Virus record (IMG/VR): IMGVR_UViG_3300034358_000008
Coordinates: 62,001 to 126,000 of that record
Length of the DNA: 64,000 nucleotides
Strand: one strand, 5' to 3'
Below, piece by piece: positions 1 through 53,801 of this stretch (positions are counted from its first letter, which is position 1; the number at the start of each line of letters is the position of its first letter). A program made the translations under genes and the position numbers. Under the pieces are notes generated by a model. The model ran no database searches. It was not told where the DNA came from and saw only the letters and a list, made by a program, of their open reading frames with translations.

Positions 1-960
1 ACCATAGATCAAAGGTGTCTTACCTGTAGTACCTTTCTCTACGATCAGTTCTACCGATGCTTGGTTAGGTAGGTCAAAGTAAGCCTCGGACCAGATAGCC
101 CCACCTGTCATGAACGTGTGTGCATACTTACCATCACGGGTAGTAATGTCACCAGCAGTTGTAGTGAAGATGTTACCGAAGAACTGTTTAGCTTTACGGG
201 CGTTATCACGTGCAGCAGATCCAGCAGCTAGTGCTACCGGAAGCGATGTTTCAATACGACTGATGTATGCAAATTCGTCGAACTGCATAATAGGTACGGT
301 CAGACCACGACCGAGTTTATCCGCAGCGATCTTATCGTTACGTGCAACAGACGTCTTGTAACGGTTACCCAAACGTACACAGGTCATCATCTCGGAGTTG
401 TCCGCATCGTTACGGTCAACCATGTCAATGTAATCAGGTAAGAGGTCTCTCATCTCCTTGAGTCGCTCAATGTTGGCGTCCCGGAGTTTGGAGTCTTTAG
501 TGATCAAGTTGATGGTAGTCTTAAAGCCCCAGATAAACATCAGGCCAACCATCAGTACGTCCGTTGATACAGACTTACCTGTCTGACGTGGTTGCAGTAG
601 TCCGAAGTTAATGTGGTTAAAGAAACTCCAGTACAGTGCGATGTTACCACGGTTAGCCAAGAAGATAGAAGGGACCGAACCTACTTGGGGAATACGGGAA
701 ACCTCACGGAAGTAATACCATGGGTTCCATTTACATTCGAAAGCAATCTTAGCTTTCGTAGTGATGTCTAAGCGTTCATCATAAGGATCGACACCTGACA
801 ACTCAGGTTGCATCAAAGCCAAATGAAACTTCCAATTCTTAACTTTGAGTTCGTCACGATACAAGTGTGCAAGTTTTAGGAAGGTTGTATTTTTGGTATT
901 AAAGTCTGCCCGAGCGGTATGGAACCGATCCCAGTCAGAAGCAAAAAGCAGCATATCCAT
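1..960 (-). CDS. Terminase large subunit, N-terminal ATPase part (runs off the window)
   Basis: Manual minus-strand translation from ATG 960: MDMLLFASDWDRF...NPWYYFRE...LLQPRQTGKSVS (Walker A)...LGRGLTVPIMQFDEF (Walker B). Position matches phiKZ gp25. Confidence 0.9.
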   Translation of the reverse strand, partial: MDMLLFASDWDRFHTARADFNTKNTTFLKLAHLYRDELKVKNWKFHLALMQPELSGVDPYDERLDITTKAKIAFECKWNPWYYFREVSRIPQVGSVPSIFLANRGNIALYWSFFNHINFGLLQPRQTGKSVSTDVLMVGLMFIWGFKTTINLITKDSKLRDANIERLKEMRDLLPDYIDMVDRNDADNSEMMTCVRLGNRYKTSVARNDKIAADKLGRGLTVPIMQFDEFAYISRIETSLPVALAAGSAARDNARKAKQFFGNIFTTTAGDITTRDGKYAHTFMTGGAIWSEAYFDLPNQASVELIVEKGTTGKTPLIYG

Positions 961-13449: not shown

Positions 13450-13579
13450 TACCGAATCTCCTTTATTGAAGGTCGTAAAATTTAACTAGTGGGATCAATC
13501 GTGTTTAATAAATATGATTGACTGTTAGTTAACACTCATAACATCGAGTTCAAAGCTCCATACTTGGGAGAACCAAAAG

Positions 13580-15688
13580 ATGGCAACTTTCACTAATGCG
13601 GTCCCGCGGGTTGTATTTAACGGGATTCGCGATCGTAGTCGTCGGGCGTTGATTCGTCCAGATGAAACCTACGCTCAACACACCCCCTTGCTGCGTCTCT
13701 TCACTGAGACTGGTCCGACCGCCACAACTTACGTTGGCGATACCGATGATGGCTTTGCTGGCATCTATGGTCAGATGTCGCTCGATCCACGTAGCAAGTA
13801 CTTTAACCAACAATCGCTTCTTGCTCTGAACCTCCTGGGTCAGGGTAATGGTTTCTATGTAAAACGTCTGCGTCCAGAAGATGCTGGTAACTCGGCACGT
13901 TTGATTCTGGCCATCGACATGGTTCGTGATATGGTACCTAAGGCAGTAACTCGCCTGAGCGGTTTCCTGTATCCCGACACAACTACCACAGGTGTTAGCG
14001 GCGGTGTAACCACCCTGGCTGACCAACTGGTAGAAGGCTTGAAGGCTCGCATCGTTTTGATTGTAGACAACGATTCTGAAGTCGGTACTCAGCGCGTTCT
14101 GCCTGGTACTATGGTTTCGAGCATCGATGGTACTCAGTCGACTATGTATCCTCTGATGGAACTGCCAACCAGTTTCTTCGGTGCCTTGGGTAATAACCTC
14201 GGTATGCGTATCTGGTCTCCAACTGCTATGGATACCGAAGGGTACGATGAGCAGGCAACTGATCAGTTCGACACCCGTATGTATCGTGTTCAGTTCGTAG
14301 AGCTGATGAACGGTCTCAACACTCCGCAGATCATCAAGACTGCACTGGGTGAAGACTACGTGAACGTTTCCTTTGATGAAGGCGTTTATTCGGAGTCTAC
14401 TGACCGCGACCTGACTATCGACCAAGTGTTGATTGCTCAGTACGAAGATGACGGTATCGAGAACGGTTTGACTCCTATGTTCTCGCCTTTCAGCCAGGTG
14501 TTCGTATATCGCGAAAACATCAGTATGGTTCAACAACTTATCTGGGATTCGGAATTGCTGGCTAACCCAGCCTTCTCTGATCAGGTAAAAGGTCCGGGTC
14601 AAATCGACTTCCTGACCATGTTGGATTTCAGCGGTGATCCGTACATGACAGTTCAACTGTTGGGTGCTTTGGATGGCGGCGTGCTGCTTGGTAAGAATGC
14701 TACAGTATTCGCTGTTGGCGGTTCTGACGGTTCTACCACCTTCGACAACTACGTTGCCCTGACTGACTTGGAGAACACCAACTTCGGTCAACTGGAAGAT
14801 CAGTACGAAGACATCGCGCGTTACCAATTCGGCTTCATCTACGATACTGGTCTGCCTCTGGCTTCCAAGTACAAGATGATGCAAGTTCTGGGTGCTCGTC
14901 GTGACCTGTATTGCATGTTCTCTACCTTCGTTGAAACCGATGCTCGTGGCCTGTCCACTAGTGATGAAGTTTCTCGTTGCATCGCGATCATGACTCGTCT
15001 GAAAGCTTTCCCTGAGTCGACCCTTTACGGTACTCCTGTTTGCCGGGCATCTATTGTTCTGCAATCCGGTAAGCTGATGGGTAGCAACTACACCAAGCGT
15101 GTTCCACAAGTGCTTGACGTTGCAATGGCTTGGGCTAAGTATGCTGGTGCTGGTAACGGTATCCTGCGTCCGGGTCTGGAAATGGATCAATCTCCGAACA
15201 ACGAGGTTAATTTCGTTAAGTCGTTGAACGTTCCGTTCTTCAATGCTCGTGTAGCTTCCAACCTGTGGGTTAACGGTGCAACCACATCGACTACCTACAA
15301 TAAGCGTCGTCAGTACTACGCTTGCCATCGCTCGGTTATGCTCGACGATACTTCGGTATTGCTGTCGCCGGTGACTGTGAACATCTGCTGCGTGATCATG
15401 CGTTTGATCCACAAGATCCACGCCAAGTTCTCGGGTAACGCTTCCCTGACTAAAGAACAACTTGTAGAGCGCTGTGACCAGGAAATTCTGGATATCACTC
15501 GTGACCTGTTCGGTGGTCGTGTGGATATCACTCCTCGGACTGAGATCACCCCAATCGACGACAACAATGGCTTCAGTTGGACTTGCACCGTTACCGTTGC
15601 GGCTAATAACCCACGTACGGTCATGAACTTCAAGCTGGAAACTGTTCGTCGCGAAGCTGCTACCGAAGGTACTGTTGGCACTGTATAA
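13580..15688 (+). CDS. Tail sheath protein (phiKZ gp29-like)
   Basis: 702 aa; N-terminus [15 protein letters not shown]; YDTG motif; followed by a tube-sized gene. Confidence 0.85.
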
Positions 15689-16880: not shown

Positions 16881-16924
16881 ACATAAGACCCCGACCGAAA
16901 GGCCGGGGCTTTATGCCGTGTTTT
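16881..16924. terminator. Bidirectional intrinsic terminator
   Basis: CCCCGACC-GAAA-GGCCGGGG hairpin with CATAA/TTATG outer stem. Confidence 0.75.
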
Positions 16925-17396
16925 AAATAAGCCAGCGAGCTTCTTTAGTCATCGCTTCTTCGTGGGTGGCACCATCAGTCATACGTTGAGCTACTCGAGA
17001 ACGATAGATCTTGCAGCGTTGGTCAGGAGTGAAAAGCGTTACATCAGTATGGTCATTAATAGCACTGTCCCGGACGACTGATTGAATTAGTTCTGCGGTG
17101 AACAATGGATCTGGATCGTTTTCGTCCATCACCACGTGTACGGTTTGTTTCTTACGTGCCCAGAATGAAGCCACTGTTTTACCAGTCTCGCTCATTACGT
17201 AAGCATTGCCTGTAACAGGATATACGACACCATTACGGTTATCACCTTTGCCAGCATTAACTGTAACAATGGGTTCGCCTTGAGCATTGTGACCAAATTC
17301 GAAATGGTCGCCTTCATCAACAAGAACCATCTTAAACCCTTTACCCACATCGGAGTCGGCTAGGTTTTCACCGGACATGATTTTAATAGAATACAT
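16923..17396 (-). CDS. Hypothetical protein
   Basis: ORF; probable start MYSIK after an AAGGT RBS. Confidence 0.6.
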   Translation of the reverse strand: MYSIKIMSGENLADSDVGKGFKMVLVDEGDHFEFGHNAQGEPIVTVNAGKGDNRNGVVYPVTGNAYVMSETGKTVASFWARKKQTVHVVMDENDPDPLFTAELIQSVVRDSAINDHTDVTLFTPDQRCKIYRSRVAQRMTDGATHEEAMTKEARWLI

Positions 17397-17465
17397 CTTA
17401 TTACCTTCTAGTAGTAGTGTAGCGATAGTGCTACACATCATGTCCAGCTGAGTATTACTTCGTGT

Positions 17466-17523: not shown

Positions 17524-18336
17524 ATGGGTTTATCTAAAGATTTAACTGGTAACCGATTTGGTTATCTGATAGCTAAGGTTATCGTACCTACGGTGAATAC
17601 ACGTTTTAGGTCGTGGCTGTGCGTTTGCGATTGTGGTAAAGATCGTATTGTTGCAACATCTGATTTAACCAGACATAAGGTTAATTCATGTGGCTGTAAA
17701 AATGCAACGTGTATAACCAATGAACGCTTTGGTCGACTTGTAGCTAAGGGTAGAGTAAAGCGCGCTAATACCCGAAACTCTTATTGGAAATGTTTATGTG
17801 ATTGCGGTACAGTTGTTGAAGTGGCCTTACATTCACTGAAAGCTGGTCTAACTAAATCGTGTGGTTGTTTAGCACGAGAATTAGCCGGCACACATACGCT
17901 CAAACATGGGTTGAGTGGTACGTATGAGTACAAGTCATGGAATGCCATGATGGATAGATGTAAGAACGATGACCGTTATATTGATCGAGGTATTACTATC
18001 TGTGATCGATGGAAAGAATCATTTGAGGCATTCCTTGAGGATATGGGGCCACGTCCAGAAAATACTTCACTCGATCGGCGAGATAATACACTTGGTTATT
18101 ATCCAGATAACTGTAGGTGGGCAGATCAGACAATACAGTTATTAAATCAGGGTATGCGGTCTGATAACAAAACTGGTATTACTGGTGTAAGCTTATTAGA
18201 ATCTGGTAAATATAGAACCCAGTTAGCTGCATACGGTAAAATGTTATTCAAAGAAGAGTTCGATACTATCGAAGAGGCTATTCAGGCACGCGTAGCTGCT
18301 GAAACAAAATATAAAGAACCGCTATTAAGGACATAA
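17524..18336 (+). mobile_element. Free-standing HNH homing endonuclease with C-terminal AP2 domain
   Basis: Two N-terminal RFG..L...WxCxCDCG...SCGC repeats; HNH-like [19 protein letters not shown]; AP2-like NKTGITGVS...[11 protein letters not shown]; visibly more AT-rich than flanks. Confidence 0.85.
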
Positions 18337-42110: not shown

Positions 42111-44270
42111 ATGGAACAAACTCACACCGATGTAAAACCAAATCCTTTTTACCAAGACATTTCTGAGTATCACCGCGAACTTGAAATCGTTAACCCACTG
42201 ATGCGTGACACAGCGCTGTATCTTTCGAGCATGACCGGAGATGATCTGGACAAGTGCTTGGCTTTCGTACAGTCGTCTATGGCCCCCGGTGGTCAGTTCG
42301 AGCTTAATGATCCTAAGACAATGATTCTGGATAAAGGTGAGAATGGTGATCGGGAGAAGAAGGTTATCCGGTTCAGCCAGTATCTAGGTCGAGTAAAGAA
42401 ACAGAACCTATTGCTCTCACCTAGTATGACCGTCTATTTACCAGAAGAAGTAAGAGCATCTACACATGCCAAGTACATCGAAGAAGGCGTTGCTAATCGT
42501 AAAGCAGTTAAGAAAGAGCAGATGCGGTTGGAAGGTGAGGGTACAACTGAAGCACTCGAATTAGCCCAAGTTCGTAAAGGCGAACAAGAGAACTTCAAAA
42601 TCAACAATAACTCCTACTCAGGAGCTACCGTTAGTGCTGCAACGATTCTCTACTACAAGTCTACTCACTCGAGCCTGACCTCTACTTGCCGTACTGCAAC
42701 TTCTTATGCTAACGCAAACAATGAGAAGTTCATCATGGGTAACCGTCACTACTACTCCCCAGAAGTGACTAAAGCTAACATGTTGAGTCTGGTCAATAAC
42801 ACTGACTTGAAACAACTTGAAGCTTGCATGCAGAAGTTCAAGATGCACTACCCAACAGCAGACGAGATCATCGACATGATTCTCTACTCGACTGCTCACT
42901 ACTGGTCCAACCCTGACTACACTGCACAGCTGCGTAAACTTGCAGCTGGTATGTCCCCGATTGGCCGTGCAGCTATCATGTACGTCGGTGACCTCTACCA
43001 TACTTACAAATACAACCCTACTTTGGTTAAGGGTTTCTTGAATGAGTTGTCGAGTGTTGGTACACCAGATAAAATTGTATCTAAAGAACAATACAACAAA
43101 TACGATGGCGACATGCAGTTGCTGGCAAGCTTCATTAACTTTGATATGATCAAAGGTCGTAACAACGAAAAGCTCGCTGAAGAAAACCCGGAAGTGTTTG
43201 ATCTGATCTACGCTACCGGTAACAATATCTCCCTAGTGTTGAATAAGTACGTTCTATTTATCAAGGCATTGTTCCTGACTAAGAACGTTCCTCCAAGCAT
43301 CCATGCATTCCCGACAGCTTATCGTCGTGCTGCCGTAATCTCAGACACTGACTCTACTATGTTCACCATGCAATACTGGGTGGAAGAGTTCTTTGGTCGA
43401 GTTACCTTTAGTGATGAAGCCAAGCGTCTGGTATTTGCTTTGGTGTTCTTGGTGTCCGAAGTGGTCATGCACATTCTGGCATTGCAGTCGATCAACATGG
43501 GCGTTACGTCCAAGAAGCTTCGTCTGCTCGCTATGAAGAACGAATACTACTTCGCAGTACTTAGTCTGACTACCCGCTCGAAACACTACTACGCGTCTCA
43601 GGATGCGGTAGAGGGTATCATGTTTGCTAAGGCCCGTATGGAAGTGAAGGGTGTTGGTCTACGAGACTCTAAGGTTCCGCCACGTATCAACAAAGCTGCT
43701 AAGAAGATGATGGAACACGTCATCACCACGATCAAACGTGAAGAGACGTTGGATCTTCCAGCCATGCTTAAGCAGATTGGCGACATCGAACGAAACATTA
43801 TGACTTCGATCTATACCGGTAAAGCGGAATACCTGACCACCGGTAAGGTTAAGAAGATTGATGCTTATAAATCGGAAGCTAACGCTACTTACGCTAAGTA
43901 CAAGTTCTGGAAAGAAGTGTTCGAACCTAGCTTTGGTTTCTTGGAAGCGCCGCCATACTCCTTCGTTAAGATCTCCGTGACTATCGATAACCGTACTCGT
44001 TTTGAGGCATGGATCGAAACTATCGAAGATAAGCCATTGGCCATGCGATTGAAGAAGTGGGCTTTGGAGAACAACAAGAAAGGCATCACTAACTTCCACG
44101 TACCAATGTCTGTGGTTGAGAACCATGGTATTCCTGAGGTTATCACCCGCGTAGCAAACGTACGTCAAACTATCGCTAACACGATGGGTAGCTTCTATCT
44201 GATCATGGAGTCCTTAGGGATCATGCTTCAGGATAAGAAGAACACCCGTCTCATTTCGGACTTTTACTGA
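42111..44270 (+). CDS. Family B DNA polymerase subunit (phiKZ gp50-like)
   Basis: Motif B KINNNSYSG, motif C ISDTDS, KHYY...EVKGV; GGAGG RBS. Confidence 0.88.
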   Translation: MEQTHTDVKPNPFYQDISEYHRELEIVNPLMRDTALYLSSMTGDDLDKCLAFVQSSMAPGGQFELNDPKTMILDKGENGDREKKVIRFSQYLGRVKKQNLLLSPSMTVYLPEEVRASTHAKYIEEGVANRKAVKKEQMRLEGEGTTEALELAQVRKGEQENFKINNNSYSGATVSAATILYYKSTHSSLTSTCRTATSYANANNEKFIMGNRHYYSPEVTKANMLSLVNNTDLKQLEACMQKFKMHYPTADEIIDMILYSTAHYWSNPDYTAQLRKLAAGMSPIGRAAIMYVGDLYHTYKYNPTLVKGFLNELSSVGTPDKIVSKEQYNKYDGDMQLLASFINFDMIKGRNNEKLAEENPEVFDLIYATGNNISLVLNKYVLFIKALFLTKNVPPSIHAFPTAYRRAAVISDTDSTMFTMQYWVEEFFGRVTFSDEAKRLVFALVFLVSEVVMHILALQSINMGVTSKKLRLLAMKNEYYFAVLSLTTRSKHYYASQDAVEGIMFAKARMEVKGVGLRDSKVPPRINKAAKKMMEHVITTIKREETLDLPAMLKQIGDIERNIMTSIYTGKAEYLTTGKVKKIDAYKSEANATYAKYKFWKEVFEPSFGFLEAPPYSFVKISVTIDNRTRFEAWIETIEDKPLAMRLKKWALENNKKGITNFHVPMSVVENHGIPEVITRVANVRQTIANTMGSFYLIMESLGIMLQDKKNTRLISDFY

Positions 44271-44456
44271 TGGATAAATTCAAAGACAAAATTGACGGTA
44301 TCGTCGAAGGTCTCCACATCTTTAAACCGCAGTCTTGGCAACATCGCAGTCAGGGGGATGCAAAAAGGGTACTCATGGCAATCCTTACCTTAAGAGAAAA
44401 CCTAGTCGGTCTGTCTCAAGAAGATTTTGAAAGAACTATCCTTAAGGCCCTTGAGT

Positions 44457-44491
44457 AATAGAACCCCTTTCAAGTTTATATCATGCACTCG
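44457..44491 (+). promoter_or_regulatory. Early promoter
   Basis: AATAGAA-N13-TATATCAT. Confidence 0.7.
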
Positions 44492-44536
44492 TATCCTAAA
44501 CAGATGTGAGTGCATCTATTTCGTCTTGAGGTTTAT

Positions 44537-44707
44537 ATGACCAAGAATGATCCTGAAATCCGAAAGCTTTTTGAACGTATGCGTAAGTTCACCCGTAATA
44601 ACAAGGTTGTGATGATCACAGCCAAAGCCTCTCCGATGACTCAAGCAGAAATCGATAGGGCTAACTCCATTCCTTACACCTGTGATTACATTGGGATGCT
44701 TCGATGA
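44537..44707 (+). CDS. Mini-protein resembling DnaB helicase motif fragments
   Basis: IRKLFERMRKFT...VVMITA; CDYIGML; GAGGT RBS. Confidence 0.5.
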   Translation: MTKNDPEIRKLFERMRKFTRNNKVVMITAKASPMTQAEIDRANSIPYTCDYIGMLR

Positions 44708-45848
44708 CATTTAACGTATCTATCGTAGATAAGGTCTATGGTGAATGGTATCTAATCGCACCAACCAAAAATGATCTATGTATGCTGCTCACCAGACTTG
44801 AAGCTGAAGACGCCGTTGAGCGCTACAAAGTAGTAGGTCACGATGGAAAACATTATGCGGCCATCGCCTATGAATTTGGGTGGATGCAAGATAATTACAA
44901 GAAGGGCTATTGAATGAACGATGCAGCCAAACTGAAAGAACTGATGACCCCAGCTAAGATGAATGGTGCGGTCTACGATAACCTATTTCAACTGGCACGT
45001 TGGGGTGCTCGTGAAGTAGGTGAGATCCCATCCAAGGGTCACATGCAAGAACTGGTTCAGAATAAATGGGTTCGGTTCAATGGGGATGAGGAGAAGTGCT
45101 GGACCATCACTGACGCTGGCCTACAAGCATTTCTGGAAGCTTACTCTAAGATCCCTAACCCACACTACAAGATCTTTGGTACCCTCCGTATCGGCTTTGC
45201 AGAGCGTTGTGGTAATGGTGAACTGGATGGTACGCCTATCCACTGTTTGGGTGGTTGCTTTGATTGGGCACGTGAAAACGTCTTCCTTAATAAGGTACTG
45301 AACTGGGCTGAGAGCTTCGGTTCTTATGACTACGCCACATTCGACTTCATTCATCCAGTGACTAAGGTTAAGACCCACTTGAAACCGGGTGACTGGGTTG
45401 TCCTGTCCGAAGACCATAACCACACTGTTCACAAACTGAGTGAAGATAATTGATGGACCTCATTAAAACAGCTGATTCTCGTTTCATGCGTAAAGGCGAC
45501 CAAGGTATCTTTGTTAATCATGTCCCTATGACTAAAGAATACCACATCACTGTTGAGAAAGAGTATTCGTGTGCAATCACCGAAGCTGTTGCCGGTTATC
45601 AAATTACTTGCAATCTGTGTAATGATCTCGGTTCGCATGCGGTACATAGTAAGTCGTTTGACATGTTCAGCGGTGGCTATACTACCGTTTACGCACTCGT
45701 TCCACGTGATGAGTACATCCGCCGAGCTAATACCATCCATGCACACGACGTGCTTACCTTAACCGATAAGTTCACCTTGGATATGGAAACACTTAATACT
45801 CGACAGGCTAAACGACTGGAGGTTGCTAATGTTACCGCATCCGTTTAA
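44704..45848 (+). other. Hypothetical ORFs 44704-44913, 44914-45453, 45450-45848
   Basis: Coupled ORFs. Confidence 0.65.
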
Positions 45849-47199
45849 GACAGATACATGGGTTGAAGGTGAGCGTTCGAATCACGCTAATCTTTGCAAT
45901 GAGATCGATCTACCTCAATCGGGAAGCGATATCTGCGTGTTGGGTATGAAGCCTTCGATGTTGAAGTACATAGCGCTCAATAACCAGATCCATCAACATC
46001 AGGTACATGGTCGGGTATGGAATCTGATTGGTGACCCTAACCTGAAGATGCTCTTTAGTTCATACTCGGGCTCAACTCCAGATCAACGCATGGACCCAGA
46101 AGCTGTAATGGATCTGGCTCGTGAACTCTATGATGAACATGAGGAAGATCTGACTGAGCTTTACAACAATTTAGGTTCACTGCGCACTATCCGTGCAATC
46201 GAACAACTTGAACGACTAAAACTCTTCGGCTCACTCGCAATCAATCAAAACTTCAAGGAACAAGGTATCATGCAATCCACAACTGAACAAATTGCAAAAC
46301 TGACCCAAGCTCAACCACACGGTCTTCGCCGTGGCGAACTGGCAATGATCTCCTCTACTGCCAATACCGGTAAGTCATCAGATACAGATGAGCTGATTCG
46401 TCTGCTGGAAGAAGCTGTTCCGGCTGTGGATAATATTGGTCCTGCCGGCACGCAGGGTGATCGTGGGGAACACGCACCTAAACTGCAATCGTTCGACAAG
46501 CCTTCTAAGGTTAAACGTAAGAAGTCCAAGCCTAAATCTAACCATCTCCCGAACATGCGTAACGCTCGTACCAAACGTGTACTGGGTGCAACCATCCTGA
46601 ACATGCTGGGTAAGGTTCAACAAGATACCCAAGACAGCTACAAGCGTTCTCTTTTGAAAGAGATTCCACTGGCTGACTTCGTAGAACTGGCATCGGGCGA
46701 GAAGCTGCCGGACTATCAGGCTAACCTGTTGAACGCAATGCAGGCTAAAGCTGATCCAACTGCCCCAATCGTTGAACGCGTTAACGCTGGCACCGGTATT
46801 GGGCTGGACATCATTCAGAAAGCATTCGATGGTTCTGTGGCAACTGATGAGCGCTTGATCGCCAATGACCAATTCGTAGAGGCATTGTATCCAGGTACAC
46901 TCGAGCGTGAGGCAAATGTAGGTCGTGGTCTGACTGCACATGTCTTGACTTTCGATGATGCACCAGAACAACTGTCTAACGAAGAACGTCTGGCTATCTT
47001 CGAAAAGAATGTTGACGAAGCTTTGGTTAAGTACATCTCCCCGGAACTGTTCCCAGAAGAACTGTCCGAAGAGAAACGTACTGAAATCATCGCATTGGTT
47101 AAGGCAGATGTGATGGAACGCAATTCGTCTATCGATCGTCAAAGCATCGTAACCACCGCAATGAGTATCCTGCATCCGCTGGACCCAATCGCTGGCTAA
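45829..47199 (+). CDS. Mosaic protein with RNR-, PolB-, DnaB-, collagen- and terminase-like motif fragments
   Basis: GGAGG RBS; motifs detailed in findings. Confidence 0.65.
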   Translation: MLPHPFKTDTWVEGERSNHANLCNEIDLPQSGSDICVLGMKPSMLKYIALNNQIHQHQVHGRVWNLIGDPNLKMLFSSYSGSTPDQRMDPEAVMDLARELYDEHEEDLTELYNNLGSLRTIRAIEQLERLKLFGSLAINQNFKEQGIMQSTTEQIAKLTQAQPHGLRRGELAMISSTANTGKSSDTDELIRLLEEAVPAVDNIGPAGTQGDRGEHAPKLQSFDKPSKVKRKKSKPKSNHLPNMRNARTKRVLGATILNMLGKVQQDTQDSYKRSLLKEIPLADFVELASGEKLPDYQANLLNAMQAKADPTAPIVERVNAGTGIGLDIIQKAFDGSVATDERLIANDQFVEALYPGTLEREANVGRGLTAHVLTFDDAPEQLSNEERLAIFEKNVDEALVKYISPELFPEELSEEKRTEIIALVKADVMERNSSIDRQSIVTTAMSILHPLDPIAG

Positions 47200-47232
47200 A
47201 CATAATCCCCTCCTTCGGGAGGGGCTTTATTT
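47200..47232 (+). terminator. Intrinsic terminator
   Basis: CCCCTCC-TTCG-GGAGGGG. Confidence 0.8.
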
Positions 47233-47249
47233 CGTAAAGGAGTTTAAAT

Positions 47250-47696
47250 ATGCGTCACTTCGCATTCCACAAGATCGCTATGCTTCGTCGTCACTTCGGG
47301 GTGAATGGTGAAGACCTGTTGGCTATCTACGATACTGCAATCGCAGGTTATCAACCCCTCGCTGAACTTAGCTATATTACCCTGTCGACGTCTAAGGTCG
47401 TTTGGGATCGTATTGCGGCTAACCCTAGTATCGAACGGGCAAAGCATCCAGGCACGAACGTAGACTGCCTGAAGCTATTCGGTGACGTGTATCTGCGTAA
47501 ACAGAACCGCGTTATAGATGAAGACGTTATTTGGCTCAGTAGTCTCGGTTGCTATGTTCCGACTGTACGGTATATGCACAATCAATTCCAGCATCTGATT
47601 GCAAGTAGTAGCTCTACCAAGAAGATCATTGCTTACGCAGAATCCTTGGCAGATAAACTGAAAGCACATATCGACGAAAACAAGGTGAAGTTGTAA
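47250..47696 (+). CDS. Probable degenerate paralog of the nucleotidyltransferase-like ORF at 2238
   Basis: ITLS..W and VPT...H...LI similarity; no DxD motif. Confidence 0.45.
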   Translation: MRHFAFHKIAMLRRHFGVNGEDLLAIYDTAIAGYQPLAELSYITLSTSKVVWDRIAANPSIERAKHPGTNVDCLKLFGDVYLRKQNRVIDEDVIWLSSLGCYVPTVRYMHNQFQHLIASSSSTKKIIAYAESLADKLKAHIDENKVKL

Positions 47697-51712: not shown

Positions 51713-51778
51713 AATCTGAAACCCAGATCCAACACACTAACTTGATCAAGTTAATCGTAATCGCTAAAGGAAAGAATC

Positions 51779-53677
51779 ATGATTCGTGACAAAGATACCG
51801 CTGCTACTCAAACCCCAGCCGCAGCAGTTCAACCAGCTCCAGCTTATCAAGCACCACAACAATCGCAGGCGACGCAAATGGAACAACCACAAGTGCAACA
51901 AACCCAATTCGCTGGTCGTGACCTGAACTCGAACTTCGAGCGTTCCGGTAAGACCCAAGGTGGCGACGCTCGTTCGAGTGAAGCACTGCAACTCTTCAAC
52001 CGTTTGAAAGAACAAGCTGTTGCATCCCAGGATCTGAAGGACGACTTCACCATCCTGCGTTTCGACCGTGACCAGAACCAAGTCGGTTGGTCTTCGCTGA
52101 TCATCGCTAAGCAAGCTACCATCAACGGTAAGCCACTGATCGTGGTTCGTCCACTGATCATGCCTAACGCTGCGATCGAACTGCCAGCCCGTAAGGTCAC
52201 CCTGCAAAACGGCATGCATCAAGAAATCATCGAGACCGAAGTTTCGGTTGGTGACGTATTCAGCAAGAAGTATCACGGTAAGCTGGTAGCTTTCGTTCAG
52301 GCATCCCTGAGCAAGCCAAACGCTGAAGTGGTTCTGGCTGGTGCATTCCCAATCCCTGCTGATCTGGTCCTGAAGGATTCCGAACTGCAACTGCGTTCGC
52401 TGTTGATCAAATCGGTTAACGCCTGTGAAGATCACCTGCAACGTCGTAGCGGTGAGAAGCCGTTCACCATCGGCATGCTGAAAGGCAACGATGAAACTCT
52501 GGCAGCCAAGATCGATACTCGTGATCTGACTGTAACCGATACTCTGGGTAACCCGATCCGTTCGGACGTGGTTGTAGGCATGCAGCGTGTTCGCCGTCAA
52601 GGTCAACAACAAGAGAACGAGTTCTACGAGACTGACGTCAAGTTGAACCAAGTATCCATGTTCACCAACCTGGAATATCAGCAACAAGCTCAGCAGAACA
52701 CCATGTTCGGTGCTGGTCAACAAGTTGCTCAACCAACCCCACCATGCACCGCAGCAGTGGTAATCACTGACGTACGTAACGCTGATGGCATTCAGGCTAA
52801 CACTCCTGAAATGTACTGGCTGTCGCTGTCCAACGCATACCGTGCAACTCACGGTCACGCTTGGGCTCGTCCATTCCTGCCACAAACTGGTAAGGTAAAA
52901 GACCTGCGTGACATCGGTGCTCTGGGCTGGTTGTCTCAGCTGCAAAACAAGATCGACACCAAGGCTGCTTCGTTCGACGACGCACAGTTCGGCATGCTGA
53001 CTCTGAGCATGATCAAACAACAGCCAGTGTTCCAGATCGACCTCAACCGTCTGGGTGAGAACGGTCCGATCGATGGCATGCTGTTGGACGCTGCTGGTGG
53101 TGAGAACCAACAGAAAGCAGTAGCAACTGTAGTTCGTCAGGTAACCAACCTGCTGGGTGTTGACTTCGGTAAGTTCTTCGACTACACCACTCAACCGATT
53201 CTGGTTAAGACTGGTCAGACTATCGACCTGGGTCACTACCTCGATGAAGATGGTGAGAAGCGCGACCGTCGTGAACTGGATAACCTGGGTGCCCTCAACG
53301 CATCGGAAGGTAACCTGAACGAATGGTGGGCTTACTACGGTTCGCAACAGAACACCAACATCCACCCGGATCAGCGTACCAAGCAGTCGCGTAACTTCGA
53401 CCGTCAGTACCTGGGTAGCACTGTTACGTACACCGGTAAAGCCGAACGCTGCACCTTCAACCCTAAGTTCATCGAAGCACTGGACGCAGCAATCGTTGCT
53501 GTTGGTCTGAGCGTAACCATGGACAATACTTCGGTATTGAACTCCGGTCAACGCTTCACCGGTAACTCGGTGATCAACCAGTTCCAAGTTGGTGGCACTG
53601 CACAAGTACAACAGTACGGTGGTCAGCAACAAGGCTACGGTCCTCAGTACAACGCTGGTGTTGGTAGCTTCTACTAA
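51779..53677 (+). CDS. chmA: Chimallin, phage nuclear shell protein
   Basis: 632 aa; Q/P/A-rich flexible N-terminus and G/Q/Y-rich C-tail; strong codon bias; immediately upstream of the nvRNAP beta' gene as in phiKZ gp54/gp55. Confidence 0.85.
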   Translation: MIRDKDTAATQTPAAAVQPAPAYQAPQQSQATQMEQPQVQQTQFAGRDLNSNFERSGKTQGGDARSSEALQLFNRLKEQAVASQDLKDDFTILRFDRDQNQVGWSSLIIAKQATINGKPLIVVRPLIMPNAAIELPARKVTLQNGMHQEIIETEVSVGDVFSKKYHGKLVAFVQASLSKPNAEVVLAGAFPIPADLVLKDSELQLRSLLIKSVNACEDHLQRRSGEKPFTIGMLKGNDETLAAKIDTRDLTVTDTLGNPIRSDVVVGMQRVRRQGQQQENEFYETDVKLNQVSMFTNLEYQQQAQQNTMFGAGQQVAQPTPPCTAAVVITDVRNADGIQANTPEMYWLSLSNAYRATHGHAWARPFLPQTGKVKDLRDIGALGWLSQLQNKIDTKAASFDDAQFGMLTLSMIKQQPVFQIDLNRLGENGPIDGMLLDAAGGENQQKAVATVVRQVTNLLGVDFGKFFDYTTQPILVKTGQTIDLGHYLDEDGEKRDRRELDNLGALNASEGNLNEWWAYYGSQQNTNIHPDQRTKQSRNFDRQYLGSTVTYTGKAERCTFNPKFIEALDAAIVAVGLSVTMDNTSVLNSGQRFTGNSVINQFQVGGTAQVQQYGGQQQGYGPQYNAGVGSFY

Positions 53678-53801
53678 TAGCAGTAGTAACACCGGTCATT
53701 ACAAAGACCCAACCACATCTACCTAAATACTGGATAAACAGATGTGGTTGTAAAACTCCAAGTAACCGGTATCGGCTAGATGGAGCGTAATGATCAACTA
53801 A

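What the first reader, a model, noticed from the sequence alone, without database searches (positions are those of the whole stretch)
45829..47199. One ORF concatenating RNR, PolB, DnaB, collagen and terminase motifs
In order: SNHANLCNEIDLPQSGSDICVLG (45877-45945) resembles the ribonucleotide reductase alpha active site SNLCxEI..P...C.L. NLKMLFSSYSGST (46039-46077) matches this phage's polymerase motif B (42591-42629). GLRRGELAMISSTANTGKS (46321-46377) is a DnaB/SF4 helicase Walker A context. GPAGTQGDRGE (46438-46470) is a collagen Gly-X-Y run. VGRGLTAHVLTFDD (46918-46960) matches this phage's terminase Walker B region (minus strand ~271-312) and shares GGTCGTGGTCTGAC. None of the surrounding domains is present, so it cannot be any of these enzymes. 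RNR and DnaB calls rest on family knowledge because those donors are not in the window.
Basis: partly seen in the sequence, partly recalled or inferred. Interest (0 to 1): 0.88.

Follow-up and report, generated by a model that had tools for sequence, protein, structure and literature searches.

The report
Mosaic phage protein copying enzyme motifs
A nucleus-forming jumbo phage encodes a non-enzymatic, mostly helical and disordered protein that carries short conserved peptide copies of key segments of the phage's own ribonucleotide reductase, terminase and portal around a unique core, which points to peptide-level mimicry of unknown purpose.

Summary
The ORF is real (45829-47199, +, 456 aa). 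It is the positional orthologue of 201phi2-1 gp88 and PhiPA3 gp49, lying between the DNA polymerase and chimallin genes of a chimallivirus. It has no enzyme fold.

Tested with family profiles against whole phage genomes and the PDB:
- **RNR-alpha catalytic loop:** supported.
- **Terminase Walker-B strand:** supported.
- **Polymerase motif B:** weak, and it sits inside an NrdB-like stretch.
- **DnaB:** not supported.
- **Gly-X-Y run:** short, but a conserved positional feature of the family.

- A 55-aa hairpin homologous to the portal protein.
- An NrdB-like stretch.
- The terminase-like peptide recurs in an unrelated virion protein family (gp140/phiKZ gp81-like).

The modules lie in low-confidence loops. 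They change order between relatives and are conserved as amino acids, not as DNA. They flank a unique 95-aa helical core found in only 35 protein clusters out of 1.84 billion.

Best reading: a hub protein displaying peptides copied from the phage's own proteins. The packaging motor is the most consistent partner. Function is untested.

The parts
45818..45822 (+). Ribosome-binding site GGAGG, 6 nt before the ATG
   Evidence: Read directly from the sequence
45829..47199 (+). ORF of 456 aa; orthologue of 201phi2-1 gp88 and PhiPA3 gp49
   Evidence: the same locus in a distant 183-aa member
45877..45945 (+). RNR-alpha (NrdA) finger-loop-like module, residues 17-39: N21, C23, E25, I26 and C36 are invariant in 19 homologues
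45976..46278 (+). NrdB-like helical stretch, residues 50-150 (probable, sub-threshold)
   Evidence: PF00268 hits in 7 of 23 members, best E 0.0031 over 100 residues. The own NrdB is the top genome hit, but the score is not significant (6.3 bits, reached by 16 of 40 shuffled databases). hhalign P 0.003 against controls of 0.22 and 0.29
46039..46077 (+). Polymerase motif-B-like peptide, residues 71-83 (weak support)
46321..46377 (+). P-loop-like peptide, residues 165-183; not significantly like DnaB or the TerL Walker A
46438..46470 (+). Short collagen-like Gly-X-Y run, residues 204-214
   Evidence: similar runs in tail fibre gp230
46504..46788 (+). Family-defining core, residues 226-320: a basic patch (227-237), one long helix and three short helices
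   Evidence: no sequence or fold relative
46918..46959 (+). Terminase Walker-B-strand-like peptide (RG, 8 residues, DD), residues 364-377
46960..47121 (+). Helical hairpin homologous to residues ~695-760 of the portal protein, residues 378-431
   Evidence: pLDDT 80-88
47207..47235 (+). Intrinsic terminator hairpin plus T run, directly after the stop codon
42591..42629 (+). Motif B of the phage's divergent family-B DNA polymerase (the compared segment)
268..312 (-). Walker B strand region of the large terminase (the compared segment)

Best explanation
Shown:
- The ORF is not an enzyme.
- It belongs to a small family found only in chimalliviruses. The family is defined by a unique core of about 95 aa: a basic patch, a long helix and three short helices. 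In many members a short collagen-like run precedes the core.
- Around the core, members carry a variable string of short modules of 15-55 aa. Several modules copy segments of the phage's own hallmark proteins. The NrdA catalytic finger loop, the TerL Walker-B strand and a portal hairpin are well supported. An NrdB stretch is probable. Polymerase motif B is doubtful.
- The short peptide modules lie in low-confidence, non-helical stretches; the portal-like hairpin is confidently helical. The RNR-like and terminase-like peptides sit in different places relative to the core in different relatives. All the modules are conserved as amino acids while synonymous sites drift.

Inferred:
- The protein is an oligomeric hub, perhaps a trimer built on the collagen-like run and the long helix.
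- It works inside the phage nucleus and displays these peptides as linear mimics. The peptides would either dock onto the parent proteins or compete with them for a partner.
- The most consistent partner set is the DNA-packaging motor. After the core, the terminase-like peptide is the most widespread module. It sits next to the portal-derived hairpin, and it also occurs in the disordered N-terminus of an unrelated virion protein family.
- One concrete version is a regulator of the kind a small terminase subunit is. The RG...DE peptide would engage the ATPase interface of TerL.
For: - Family and synteny.
- No fold or family match.
- NrdA loop.
- TerL peptide.
- The same peptide occurs in 21 of 50 gp140-like proteins. 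In the window's own genome it matches TerL at 10 of 16 positions.
- Portal hairpin: blastp E 1.5e-11, a blastp-short E of 2e-14, hhalign probability 94% with E 1.7e-8, and E 8e-5 for the window ORF against its own portal.
- The short peptide modules lie in low-pLDDT loops.
- Module order varies between relatives.
- Constraint is on amino acids, not DNA: motifs 0.45-0.55 aa identity, linkers 0.21, core 0.78. Among identical amino acids, 0.46-0.64 use the same codon in every region, apart from one poorly conserved linker with only 13 such sites.
- The core model is confident: pLDDT 84.8.
- The Gly-X-Y run is positionally conserved.
- PhiPA3 gp49 was labelled by RecA-miniTurboID inside the phage nucleus, in 1 of 3 trials (PMC10643120).
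Against: - No partner has been shown. Everything about binding and the packaging role is inference.
- In the parent enzymes the Walker-B strand and the RNR finger loop are buried, so it is unclear what could recognise them as free peptides.
- The RNR-like modules do not fit a packaging role.
- The terminase-like peptide is absent from 201phi2-1 gp88 and PhiPA3 gp49.
- A profile built only from distant members hits gp140 (30.7 bits) but not TerL. The TerL likeness may therefore be secondary to a gp140-type motif.
- There is no sequence or fold similarity to any small terminase subunit.
- The gene sits with replication genes, not packaging genes.
- The nuclear-localisation evidence is a single weak proximity-labelling hit on a relative that lacks most of the modules.
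Confidence: 0.4

Rival explanations
1. Frozen mosaic without mimicry. Short gene fragments were captured by illegitimate recombination at a hypervariable locus. They are now kept because they form part of this protein's own structure or interactions, with no functional link to the donor proteins.
For: - The locus is hypervariable, with members of 85-822 aa around one core.
- Other modules are shared with proteins of no obvious common theme: gp34 and gp160 (E 4e-6 and 0.003) and a tail-fibre repeat in PhiPA3 gp49 (E 0.001).
- The two Cys, the His and the acidic residues of the N-terminal module could simply be a small metal site.
Against: - The invariant residues of the RNR-like module are exactly the catalytic N, C and E plus the second redox Cys.
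- The terminase-like peptide recurs independently in gp140-like proteins, and there it closely resembles the TerL sequence of the same genome.
- Donors are enriched for hallmark proteins, and within them for catalytic strands.
Confidence: 0.25
2. Immune decoy. The peptides imitate epitopes of terminase, portal and other hallmark proteins that host pattern-recognition defences such as Avs sense, and so block or divert those sensors.
For: - Terminase and portal are the two known Avs triggers (my own knowledge of Gao et al. 2022, not retrieved here), and both are represented.
- Chimallivirus proteins are made in the cytoplasm, where they are exposed to such sensors.
Against: - Avs sensors recognise folded domains, not 15-aa strands.
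- A true mimic would be expected to trigger the sensor rather than block it.
- No known sensor for RNR explains the most conserved N-terminal module.
- The one localisation datum puts a relative inside the nucleus.
- No similarity to PADLOC defence-system models. None of the libraries used holds anti-defence proteins, so that comparison was not made.
Confidence: 0.12
3. Chance resemblance and over-reading of a disordered ORFan.
For: - The DnaB call is at chance level and the polymerase call is close to it.
- A 9.4-bit 'NSNLCAEI' hit occurs in a non-coding antisense frame.
- In the unbiased sliding scan several top hits fall in antisense frames.
Against: - NrdA and TerL are the top hits of whole-genome searches in two genomes, beyond nearly every shuffled database (0 of 40 for both in 201phi2-1, 1 of 100 for TerL in the window).
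- RNR alpha makes up 11 of the 13 hits in a 177,635-sequence PDB search, including the ten best.
- The portal match has E 1e-11 or better.
- The ORF has 30 or more homologues under purifying selection.
Confidence: 0.05
4. DNA-level function: decoy or landing sites for homing endonucleases or inteins, which typically target exactly these active-site codons, or patches maintained by gene conversion from the donor genes.
For: - All donors are classic intein or homing-endonuclease hosts, and chimalliviruses use intron endonucleases as weapons (PMC12908238).
- 201phi2-1 carries an HNH gene and an intron-split RNAP gene.
Against: - The ORF and its own NrdA share only 19-23 of 45 nt across the motif in four genomes, and the synonymous codons differ.
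- There is no excess of codon identity in the motif regions.
- The shared 14-mer is expected by chance.
Confidence: 0.03
5. A degenerate or split enzyme: an RNR, a P-loop ATPase or a polymerase fragment that still works in trans.
For: - Sub-threshold Pfam hits to both RNR subunits.
- Chimalliviruses do split enzymes; both the polymerase and the RNAP are in pieces.
Against: - Only 27 residues match the 523-position barrel model.
- No motif A or C, and no Walker A/B pair.
- The model is all-helical or disordered, with no fold match.
- Intact NrdA, NrdB, Pol, TerL and portal genes exist in the same genome.
Confidence: 0.02

Closest known systems
201phi2-1 gp88 / PhiPA3 gp49 (uncharacterised chimallivirus proteins)
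   Same: - Same core domain (E down to 1e-47).
- Same position between the DNA polymerase and the gp52-like and chimallin genes.
- gp88 also has the NrdA-like, NrdB-like, polymerase-like and portal-like modules.
   Different: - The window protein adds the terminase-like peptide and the P-loop-like peptide, and it lacks gp88's ~100-aa insert and C-terminal domain.
- gp49 shares only the core and instead carries a tail-fibre repeat.
- Neither relative has a known function.
N-terminal disordered region of gp140 / phiKZ gp81-like virion proteins (PHROG 18270)
   Same: It carries one or two copies of the same RG...DE..Y peptide that resembles the TerL Walker-B strand.
   Different: It is an unrelated protein and a virion component. 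It has no core domain and none of the other modules.
Short-linear-motif mimicry by viral proteins (well described for eukaryotic viruses; my own knowledge)
   Same: Short conserved peptides in disordered regions, modular and shuffled, evolving quickly around a folded anchor.
   Different: Here the models being copied are the phage's own proteins, and their normally buried catalytic strands, rather than host interaction motifs. I know of no phage precedent.
Small terminase subunit as regulator of TerL (e.g. T4 gp16; my own knowledge)
   Same: A small oligomeric helical protein with a basic, possibly DNA-binding region and a short peptide that could engage TerL. No small terminase subunit is annotated in the complete 201phi2-1 record.
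   Different: - No sequence or fold similarity to any TerS.
- It is not adjacent to terL.
- The TerL-like peptide is missing from some members.
Protein decoys against defence systems (e.g. Ocr, Avs inhibitors; my own knowledge)
   Same: The idea of imitating a recognised molecular pattern.
   Different: Known decoys imitate DNA or bind sensors as folded proteins. None is a string of peptide copies of several phage proteins. Nothing here was tested.

Membership tests
201phi2-1 gp88 / PhiPA3 gp49 family | Conserved ~95-aa core (basic patch, G..IL..LG.VQ.DT, LP.YQ) | tested here: met
   28 invariant columns in 23 sequences. 35 clusters with E<=1e-10 among 1.84 billion representatives.
201phi2-1 gp88 / PhiPA3 gp49 family | Position between the divergent DNA polymerase and the gp52-like and chimallin genes | tested here: met
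Class I ribonucleotide reductase alpha (PF02867) | Ten-stranded alpha/beta barrel of about 500 residues | tested here: not met
   Only residues 13-39 match profile positions 202-230, at 13 bits against a cut-off of 23.9, and only in 2 of 23 members. The model has no strands.
Class I ribonucleotide reductase alpha (PF02867) | Finger-loop N-x-C-x-E and the following redox Cys | tested here: met
   N21, C23, E25 and C36 are invariant. They align to NrdA residues 434-466.
Ribonucleotide reductase beta (PF00268) | Ferritin-like helix bundle with six metal ligands and the radical Tyr | tested here: not met
   Sub-threshold hit of 17.4 bits against a cut-off of 33.6, covering profile positions 87-187 only. 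The helix carrying the last two metal ligands is outside the matched stretch. Counterparts of an earlier His and Glu ligand (H55, E128) were assigned by eye from spacing, not by an alignment.
Family B DNA polymerase | Motifs A, B and C in a palm/fingers fold | tested here: not met
   Only an 11-13-residue resemblance to motif B. No Pfam hit.
DnaB / SF4 helicase | RecA-like core with Walker A, Walker B and an arginine finger | tested here: not met
   GKS is present in 4 of 13 aligned members. No DnaB hit in the PDB or the genome.
Large terminase (TerL) | ATPase domain (Walker A, Walker B, coupling motif) plus a nuclease domain | tested here: not met
   Only the 14-17-residue Walker-B-strand peptide matches.
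Portal protein | Clip, stem, wing and crown domains forming a dodecamer | tested here: not met
   Only a ~55-aa hairpin is homologous.
Collagen-like protein | A long uninterrupted Gly-X-Y array able to form a triple helix | tested here: inconclusive
   4 in-register Gly here, up to 7 in relatives. This is too short to stand alone, and the oligomeric state is unknown.
Small terminase subunit | DNA-binding domain, oligomerisation domain and TerL-binding peptide | tested here: inconclusive
   No Pfam, PHROG, PDB or fold match. The architecture is only loosely compatible.
Anti-defence decoy | Binds and blocks a host immune sensor | not testable with these tools
   PADLOC models defence proteins only, and it gave no hit.

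The most novel reading that the evidence does not exclude
Chimalliviruses keep a dedicated 'self-mimic' hub. Its disordered arms display peptide copies of normally buried catalytic or interface strands of the phage's own terminase, portal and ribonucleotide reductase. The peptides would act in trans in one of two ways. They could plug into the packaging ATPase as a pseudo-subunit regulator, which would make this the missing small-terminase-like factor. Or they could act as multi-epitope decoys for host sensors of hallmark phage proteins. The same terminase-like peptide in gp140-like virion proteins would then be a shared address or regulatory tag.
Probability: 0.15. Interest if true: 0.9.

Novelty: categorically new. 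Interest (0 to 1): 0.62.

Why it matters
If the modules work as mimics, this would be a new way for a phage to regulate or protect its own machinery: short linear peptides copied from its own essential proteins. It would also give entry points into open chimallivirus questions.
- How is the terminase controlled at the phage nucleus, and where is the small terminase subunit?
- What marks proteins for the nucleus or the capsid?
- How do these phages cope with sensors of terminase and portal?

Even on the conservative reading it documents a hypervariable locus where 15-55-aa gene fragments are captured, shuffled and kept under selection. That is a clear case of new protein construction from pieces of old ones.

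Tried and rejected
- **Family and fold searches.** The whole protein and the whole-family profile found nothing in Pfam, PHROGs, PADLOC, NCBIfam or PDB sequences. Foldseek on two AlphaFold models and the ESM Atlas also found nothing.
- **DnaB.** The family profile, a subset profile of the GKS-containing members, and direct comparison with the 201phi2-1 and own-genome DnaB-like helicases all stayed at chance level. So did an alternative match of TGKS..TD.L to the TerL Walker A.
- **PolB.** No PolB appears in the PDB hits. Only the phage's own divergent polymerase matches, and weakly.
- **NrdB.** The PDB search with residues 38-160 found no NrdB. The genome HMM hit is top-ranked but not significant. 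Support rests on Pfam and hhalign only.
- **TerL derivation.** hhalign aligns only the motif, with P 0.026-0.043.
- **DNA-level explanations.** Gene conversion and endonuclease decoys were rejected by codon analysis.
- **Literature.** Nothing on function in papers mentioning gp88, gp49, phiKZ gp51 or gp81.
- **gp140 relatives.** The IMG/VR scan for gp140 relatives found only the query itself.
- **Not used.** Sequencing-run and read tools were not used, because the source is an uncultured viral genome.
Full report
**What is there**

The window is part of an uncultured chimallivirus (nucleus-forming jumbo phage) genome, IMGVR_UViG_3300034358_000008, 324,912 bp. Window coordinates are contig coordinates minus 62,000. 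The evidence for the phage type:
- Chimallin at 51779-53677 (PF25677, E 4e-254).
- A phiKZ-type tail sheath and an RNAP fragment.
- A large terminase running off the window start (PHROG 2, E 4e-43).
- A divergent family-B polymerase at 42111-44270, 76% identical in DNA to that of Pseudomonas phage 201phi2-1.

The finding is one ORF, 45829-47199 on the + strand, 456 aa. It has a GGAGG ribosome-binding site and ends at a strong terminator hairpin. By sequence and by position it is the orthologue of 201phi2-1 gp88 and PhiPA3 gp49, both annotated as hypothetical.

**No known fold**

Nothing was found in Pfam, PHROGs, PADLOC or NCBIfam. A family-profile search of PDB sequences, Foldseek on the AlphaFold model and the ESM Atlas also gave nothing.

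The AlphaFold2 model built with 23 homologues is all-helical with long low-confidence stretches (mean pLDDT 62.6).

**Are the motifs more than chance?**

The first key fact is that they are conserved. Thirty homologues were found. In the alignment the invariant residues of the N-terminal segment are N21, C23, E25, I26 and C36.

I cut family profiles for each segment and searched them without filters, using two background sets. One was the 314 six-frame ORFs of the window. The other was the 1,513 six-frame ORFs (205,588 aa) of the complete 201phi2-1 genome. The null was shuffled copies of the same databases.

| Segment | Top hit | Score | Shuffled databases reaching it |
|---|---|---|---|
| RNR-like | phage's own NrdA at its active site | 14.6 bits | 0 of 40 |
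| Terminase-like | TerL in both genomes | 14.0 and 12.7 bits | 1 of 100 and 0 of 40 |
| Polymerase-like | polymerase motif B in both genomes | 7.8 and 8.2 bits | 2 of 100 and 3 of 40 |
| DnaB-like | no helicase hit | not significant | 8-10 of 40 |

Further points on these segments:
- The RNR profile searched against 177,635 PDB sequences returns 13 hits. Eleven are RNR alpha chains of different subclasses, all aligned on the catalytic finger loop and the next Cys.
- An unbiased sliding-window scan of the whole alignment again put NrdA and TerL at the top.
- The DnaB-like profile finds no helicase in the PDB.
- The Gly-X-Y run is short but real. 16 of 56 relatives have at least four in-register Gly, always 82-104 residues before the core.

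- **Portal hairpin.** The confidently modelled helical hairpin at residues 378-431 is homologous to residues ~695-760 of the portal protein (201phi2-1 gp214, the counterpart of phiKZ gp129, which is the portal according to PMC13250141). A relative gives blastp E 1.5e-11 and blastp-short E 2e-14. The window ORF against its own portal gives E 8e-5. The profile-profile probability is 94% with E 1.7e-8.
- **NrdB-like stretch.** Seven of 23 members give sub-threshold Pfam hits to the RNR small subunit. The best covers 100 residues at E 0.0031. The phage's own NrdB is the top genome hit of that segment, and hhalign gives P 0.003 against 0.22-0.29 for controls. The polymerase-like peptide lies inside this stretch, which lowers its standing further.
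- **A recurrent linear motif.** A profile of all 23 instances of the terminase-like peptide hits 201phi2-1 gp140 even better than TerL (23.3 against 21.3 bits; null maximum 10.4). gp140 is a virion protein (phiKZ gp81-like) with two tandem copies. The peptide is present in the variable N-terminal region of 21 of 50 gp140 homologues. In the window's own genome it matches TerL at 10 of 16 positions.
- **Other shared modules.** Other family members share modules with gp34 and gp160. PhiPA3 gp49 starts with a tail-fibre repeat.

**Architecture of the family**

The only part common to all members is a ~95-aa core, residues 226-320. It has a basic patch, a long helix and three short helices, and it models at pLDDT 84.8 on its own. 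It has no sequence or fold relative.

A full scan of 1.84 billion representative proteins finds it in just 35 clusters, in proteins of 85-822 aa. A 183-aa member occupies the same locus.

The peptide modules move around the core. The terminase-like peptide is N-terminal of the core in the small members and C-terminal in the window clade. The N-x-C-x-E peptide turns up at various places.

**Peptide or DNA?**

Across four genomes the ORF and its own nrdA share only 19-23 of 45 nt over the motif, and they use different synonymous codons.

Among five homologues, amino-acid identity is 0.45-0.55 in the modules, 0.21 in the linkers and 0.78 in the core. The share of identical codons among identical amino acids is 0.46-0.64 in every region, apart from one poorly conserved linker with only 13 such sites.

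The shared 14-mer is expected by chance. Selection therefore acts on the peptides. Gene conversion and endonuclease-decoy ideas are disfavoured, even though all the donors are classic intron or intein hosts and chimalliviruses do use intron endonucleases.

**Interpretation**

It is shown that this is a real, conserved, non-enzymatic mosaic whose modules copy segments of NrdA, TerL and the portal, probably NrdB, and doubtfully the polymerase.

It is inferred that it is a hub displaying these peptides as mimics. The packaging motor is the most coherent partner, because the terminase-like peptide is the most widespread module, sits next to the portal hairpin and is shared with a virion protein.

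The only experimental datum is weak. PhiPA3 gp49 was labelled once in three trials by RecA-miniTurboID inside the phage nucleus (PMC10643120).

Three things remain unexplained:
- The RNR-like modules do not fit a packaging role.
- The copied strands are buried in their parent enzymes.
- Some members lack the terminase-like peptide.

The immune-decoy reading is not excluded, but nothing supports it directly.

**Verdict**

No described family or system fits. Function is untested.

Noticed in passing
Same genome, outside the window (protein P0087; 201phi2-1 gp140 = L004 33311-34714): gp140 / phiKZ gp81-like virion proteins carry one or two copies of a peptide resembling the TerL Walker-B strand in their variable, probably disordered N-terminus. 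In the window's genome it matches TerL at 10 of 16 positions.
   Followed up: partly
L027 1001-2524 (same genome, outside the window): The phage's DnaB-like helicase (PHROG 3213) reads NFKS at the position where 201phi2-1 gp197 has QGKS, so its Walker A looks degenerate.
   Followed up: no
window 44200-47400: There are no sigma-70-like promoter matches where about 5 are expected by chance. This is consistent with transcription by the phage's own RNA polymerases.
   Followed up: no
window 46378-47175 (-): A 265-aa antisense ORF lies entirely inside the gene. Several other long antisense ORFs shadow real genes in the window (for example 13550-15460 and 51764-53692). They look like shadows of codon usage, not genes.
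   Followed up: no
window 17524-18336 (+): An ORF at the same position, and of about the same length (270 aa), as the HNH endonuclease gp35 of 201phi2-1. It lies between the tail tube and the gp36-like gene and may be a free-standing homing endonuclease. The sequences were not compared.
   Followed up: no
window 42111-44270, and 201phi2-1 gp144 (L004 35838-37967): The family-B polymerase is split. The polymerase domain is next to this ORF, and the exonuclease part is encoded about 40 kb away in 201phi2-1.
   Followed up: no
window 45450-45848 and 45829: The upstream 132-aa ORF overlaps the start of the gene by 20 nt, which suggests translational coupling within the polymerase operon.
   Followed up: no
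L003 19152-19838 (201phi2-1 gp34), 201phi2-1 gp160, and window 16923-17441 (-): A 'DPDP.RT.E..Q.IV' module is shared between gp34, gp160 and some members of the family (E 4e-6). This is another short peptide that recurs in unrelated proteins.
   Followed up: partly
L002 4278-5402 (PhiPA3 gp49): The N-terminus of PhiPA3 gp49 is one copy of the 'SAYE.A...GF.G...EW..SL.G' repeat found in the tail fibre gp230 (E 0.001).
   Followed up: partly
L006/L007 (201phi2-1 196441-201279): The virion RNAP beta-subunit gene gp273/274 is annotated as interrupted by a mobile element.
   Followed up: no
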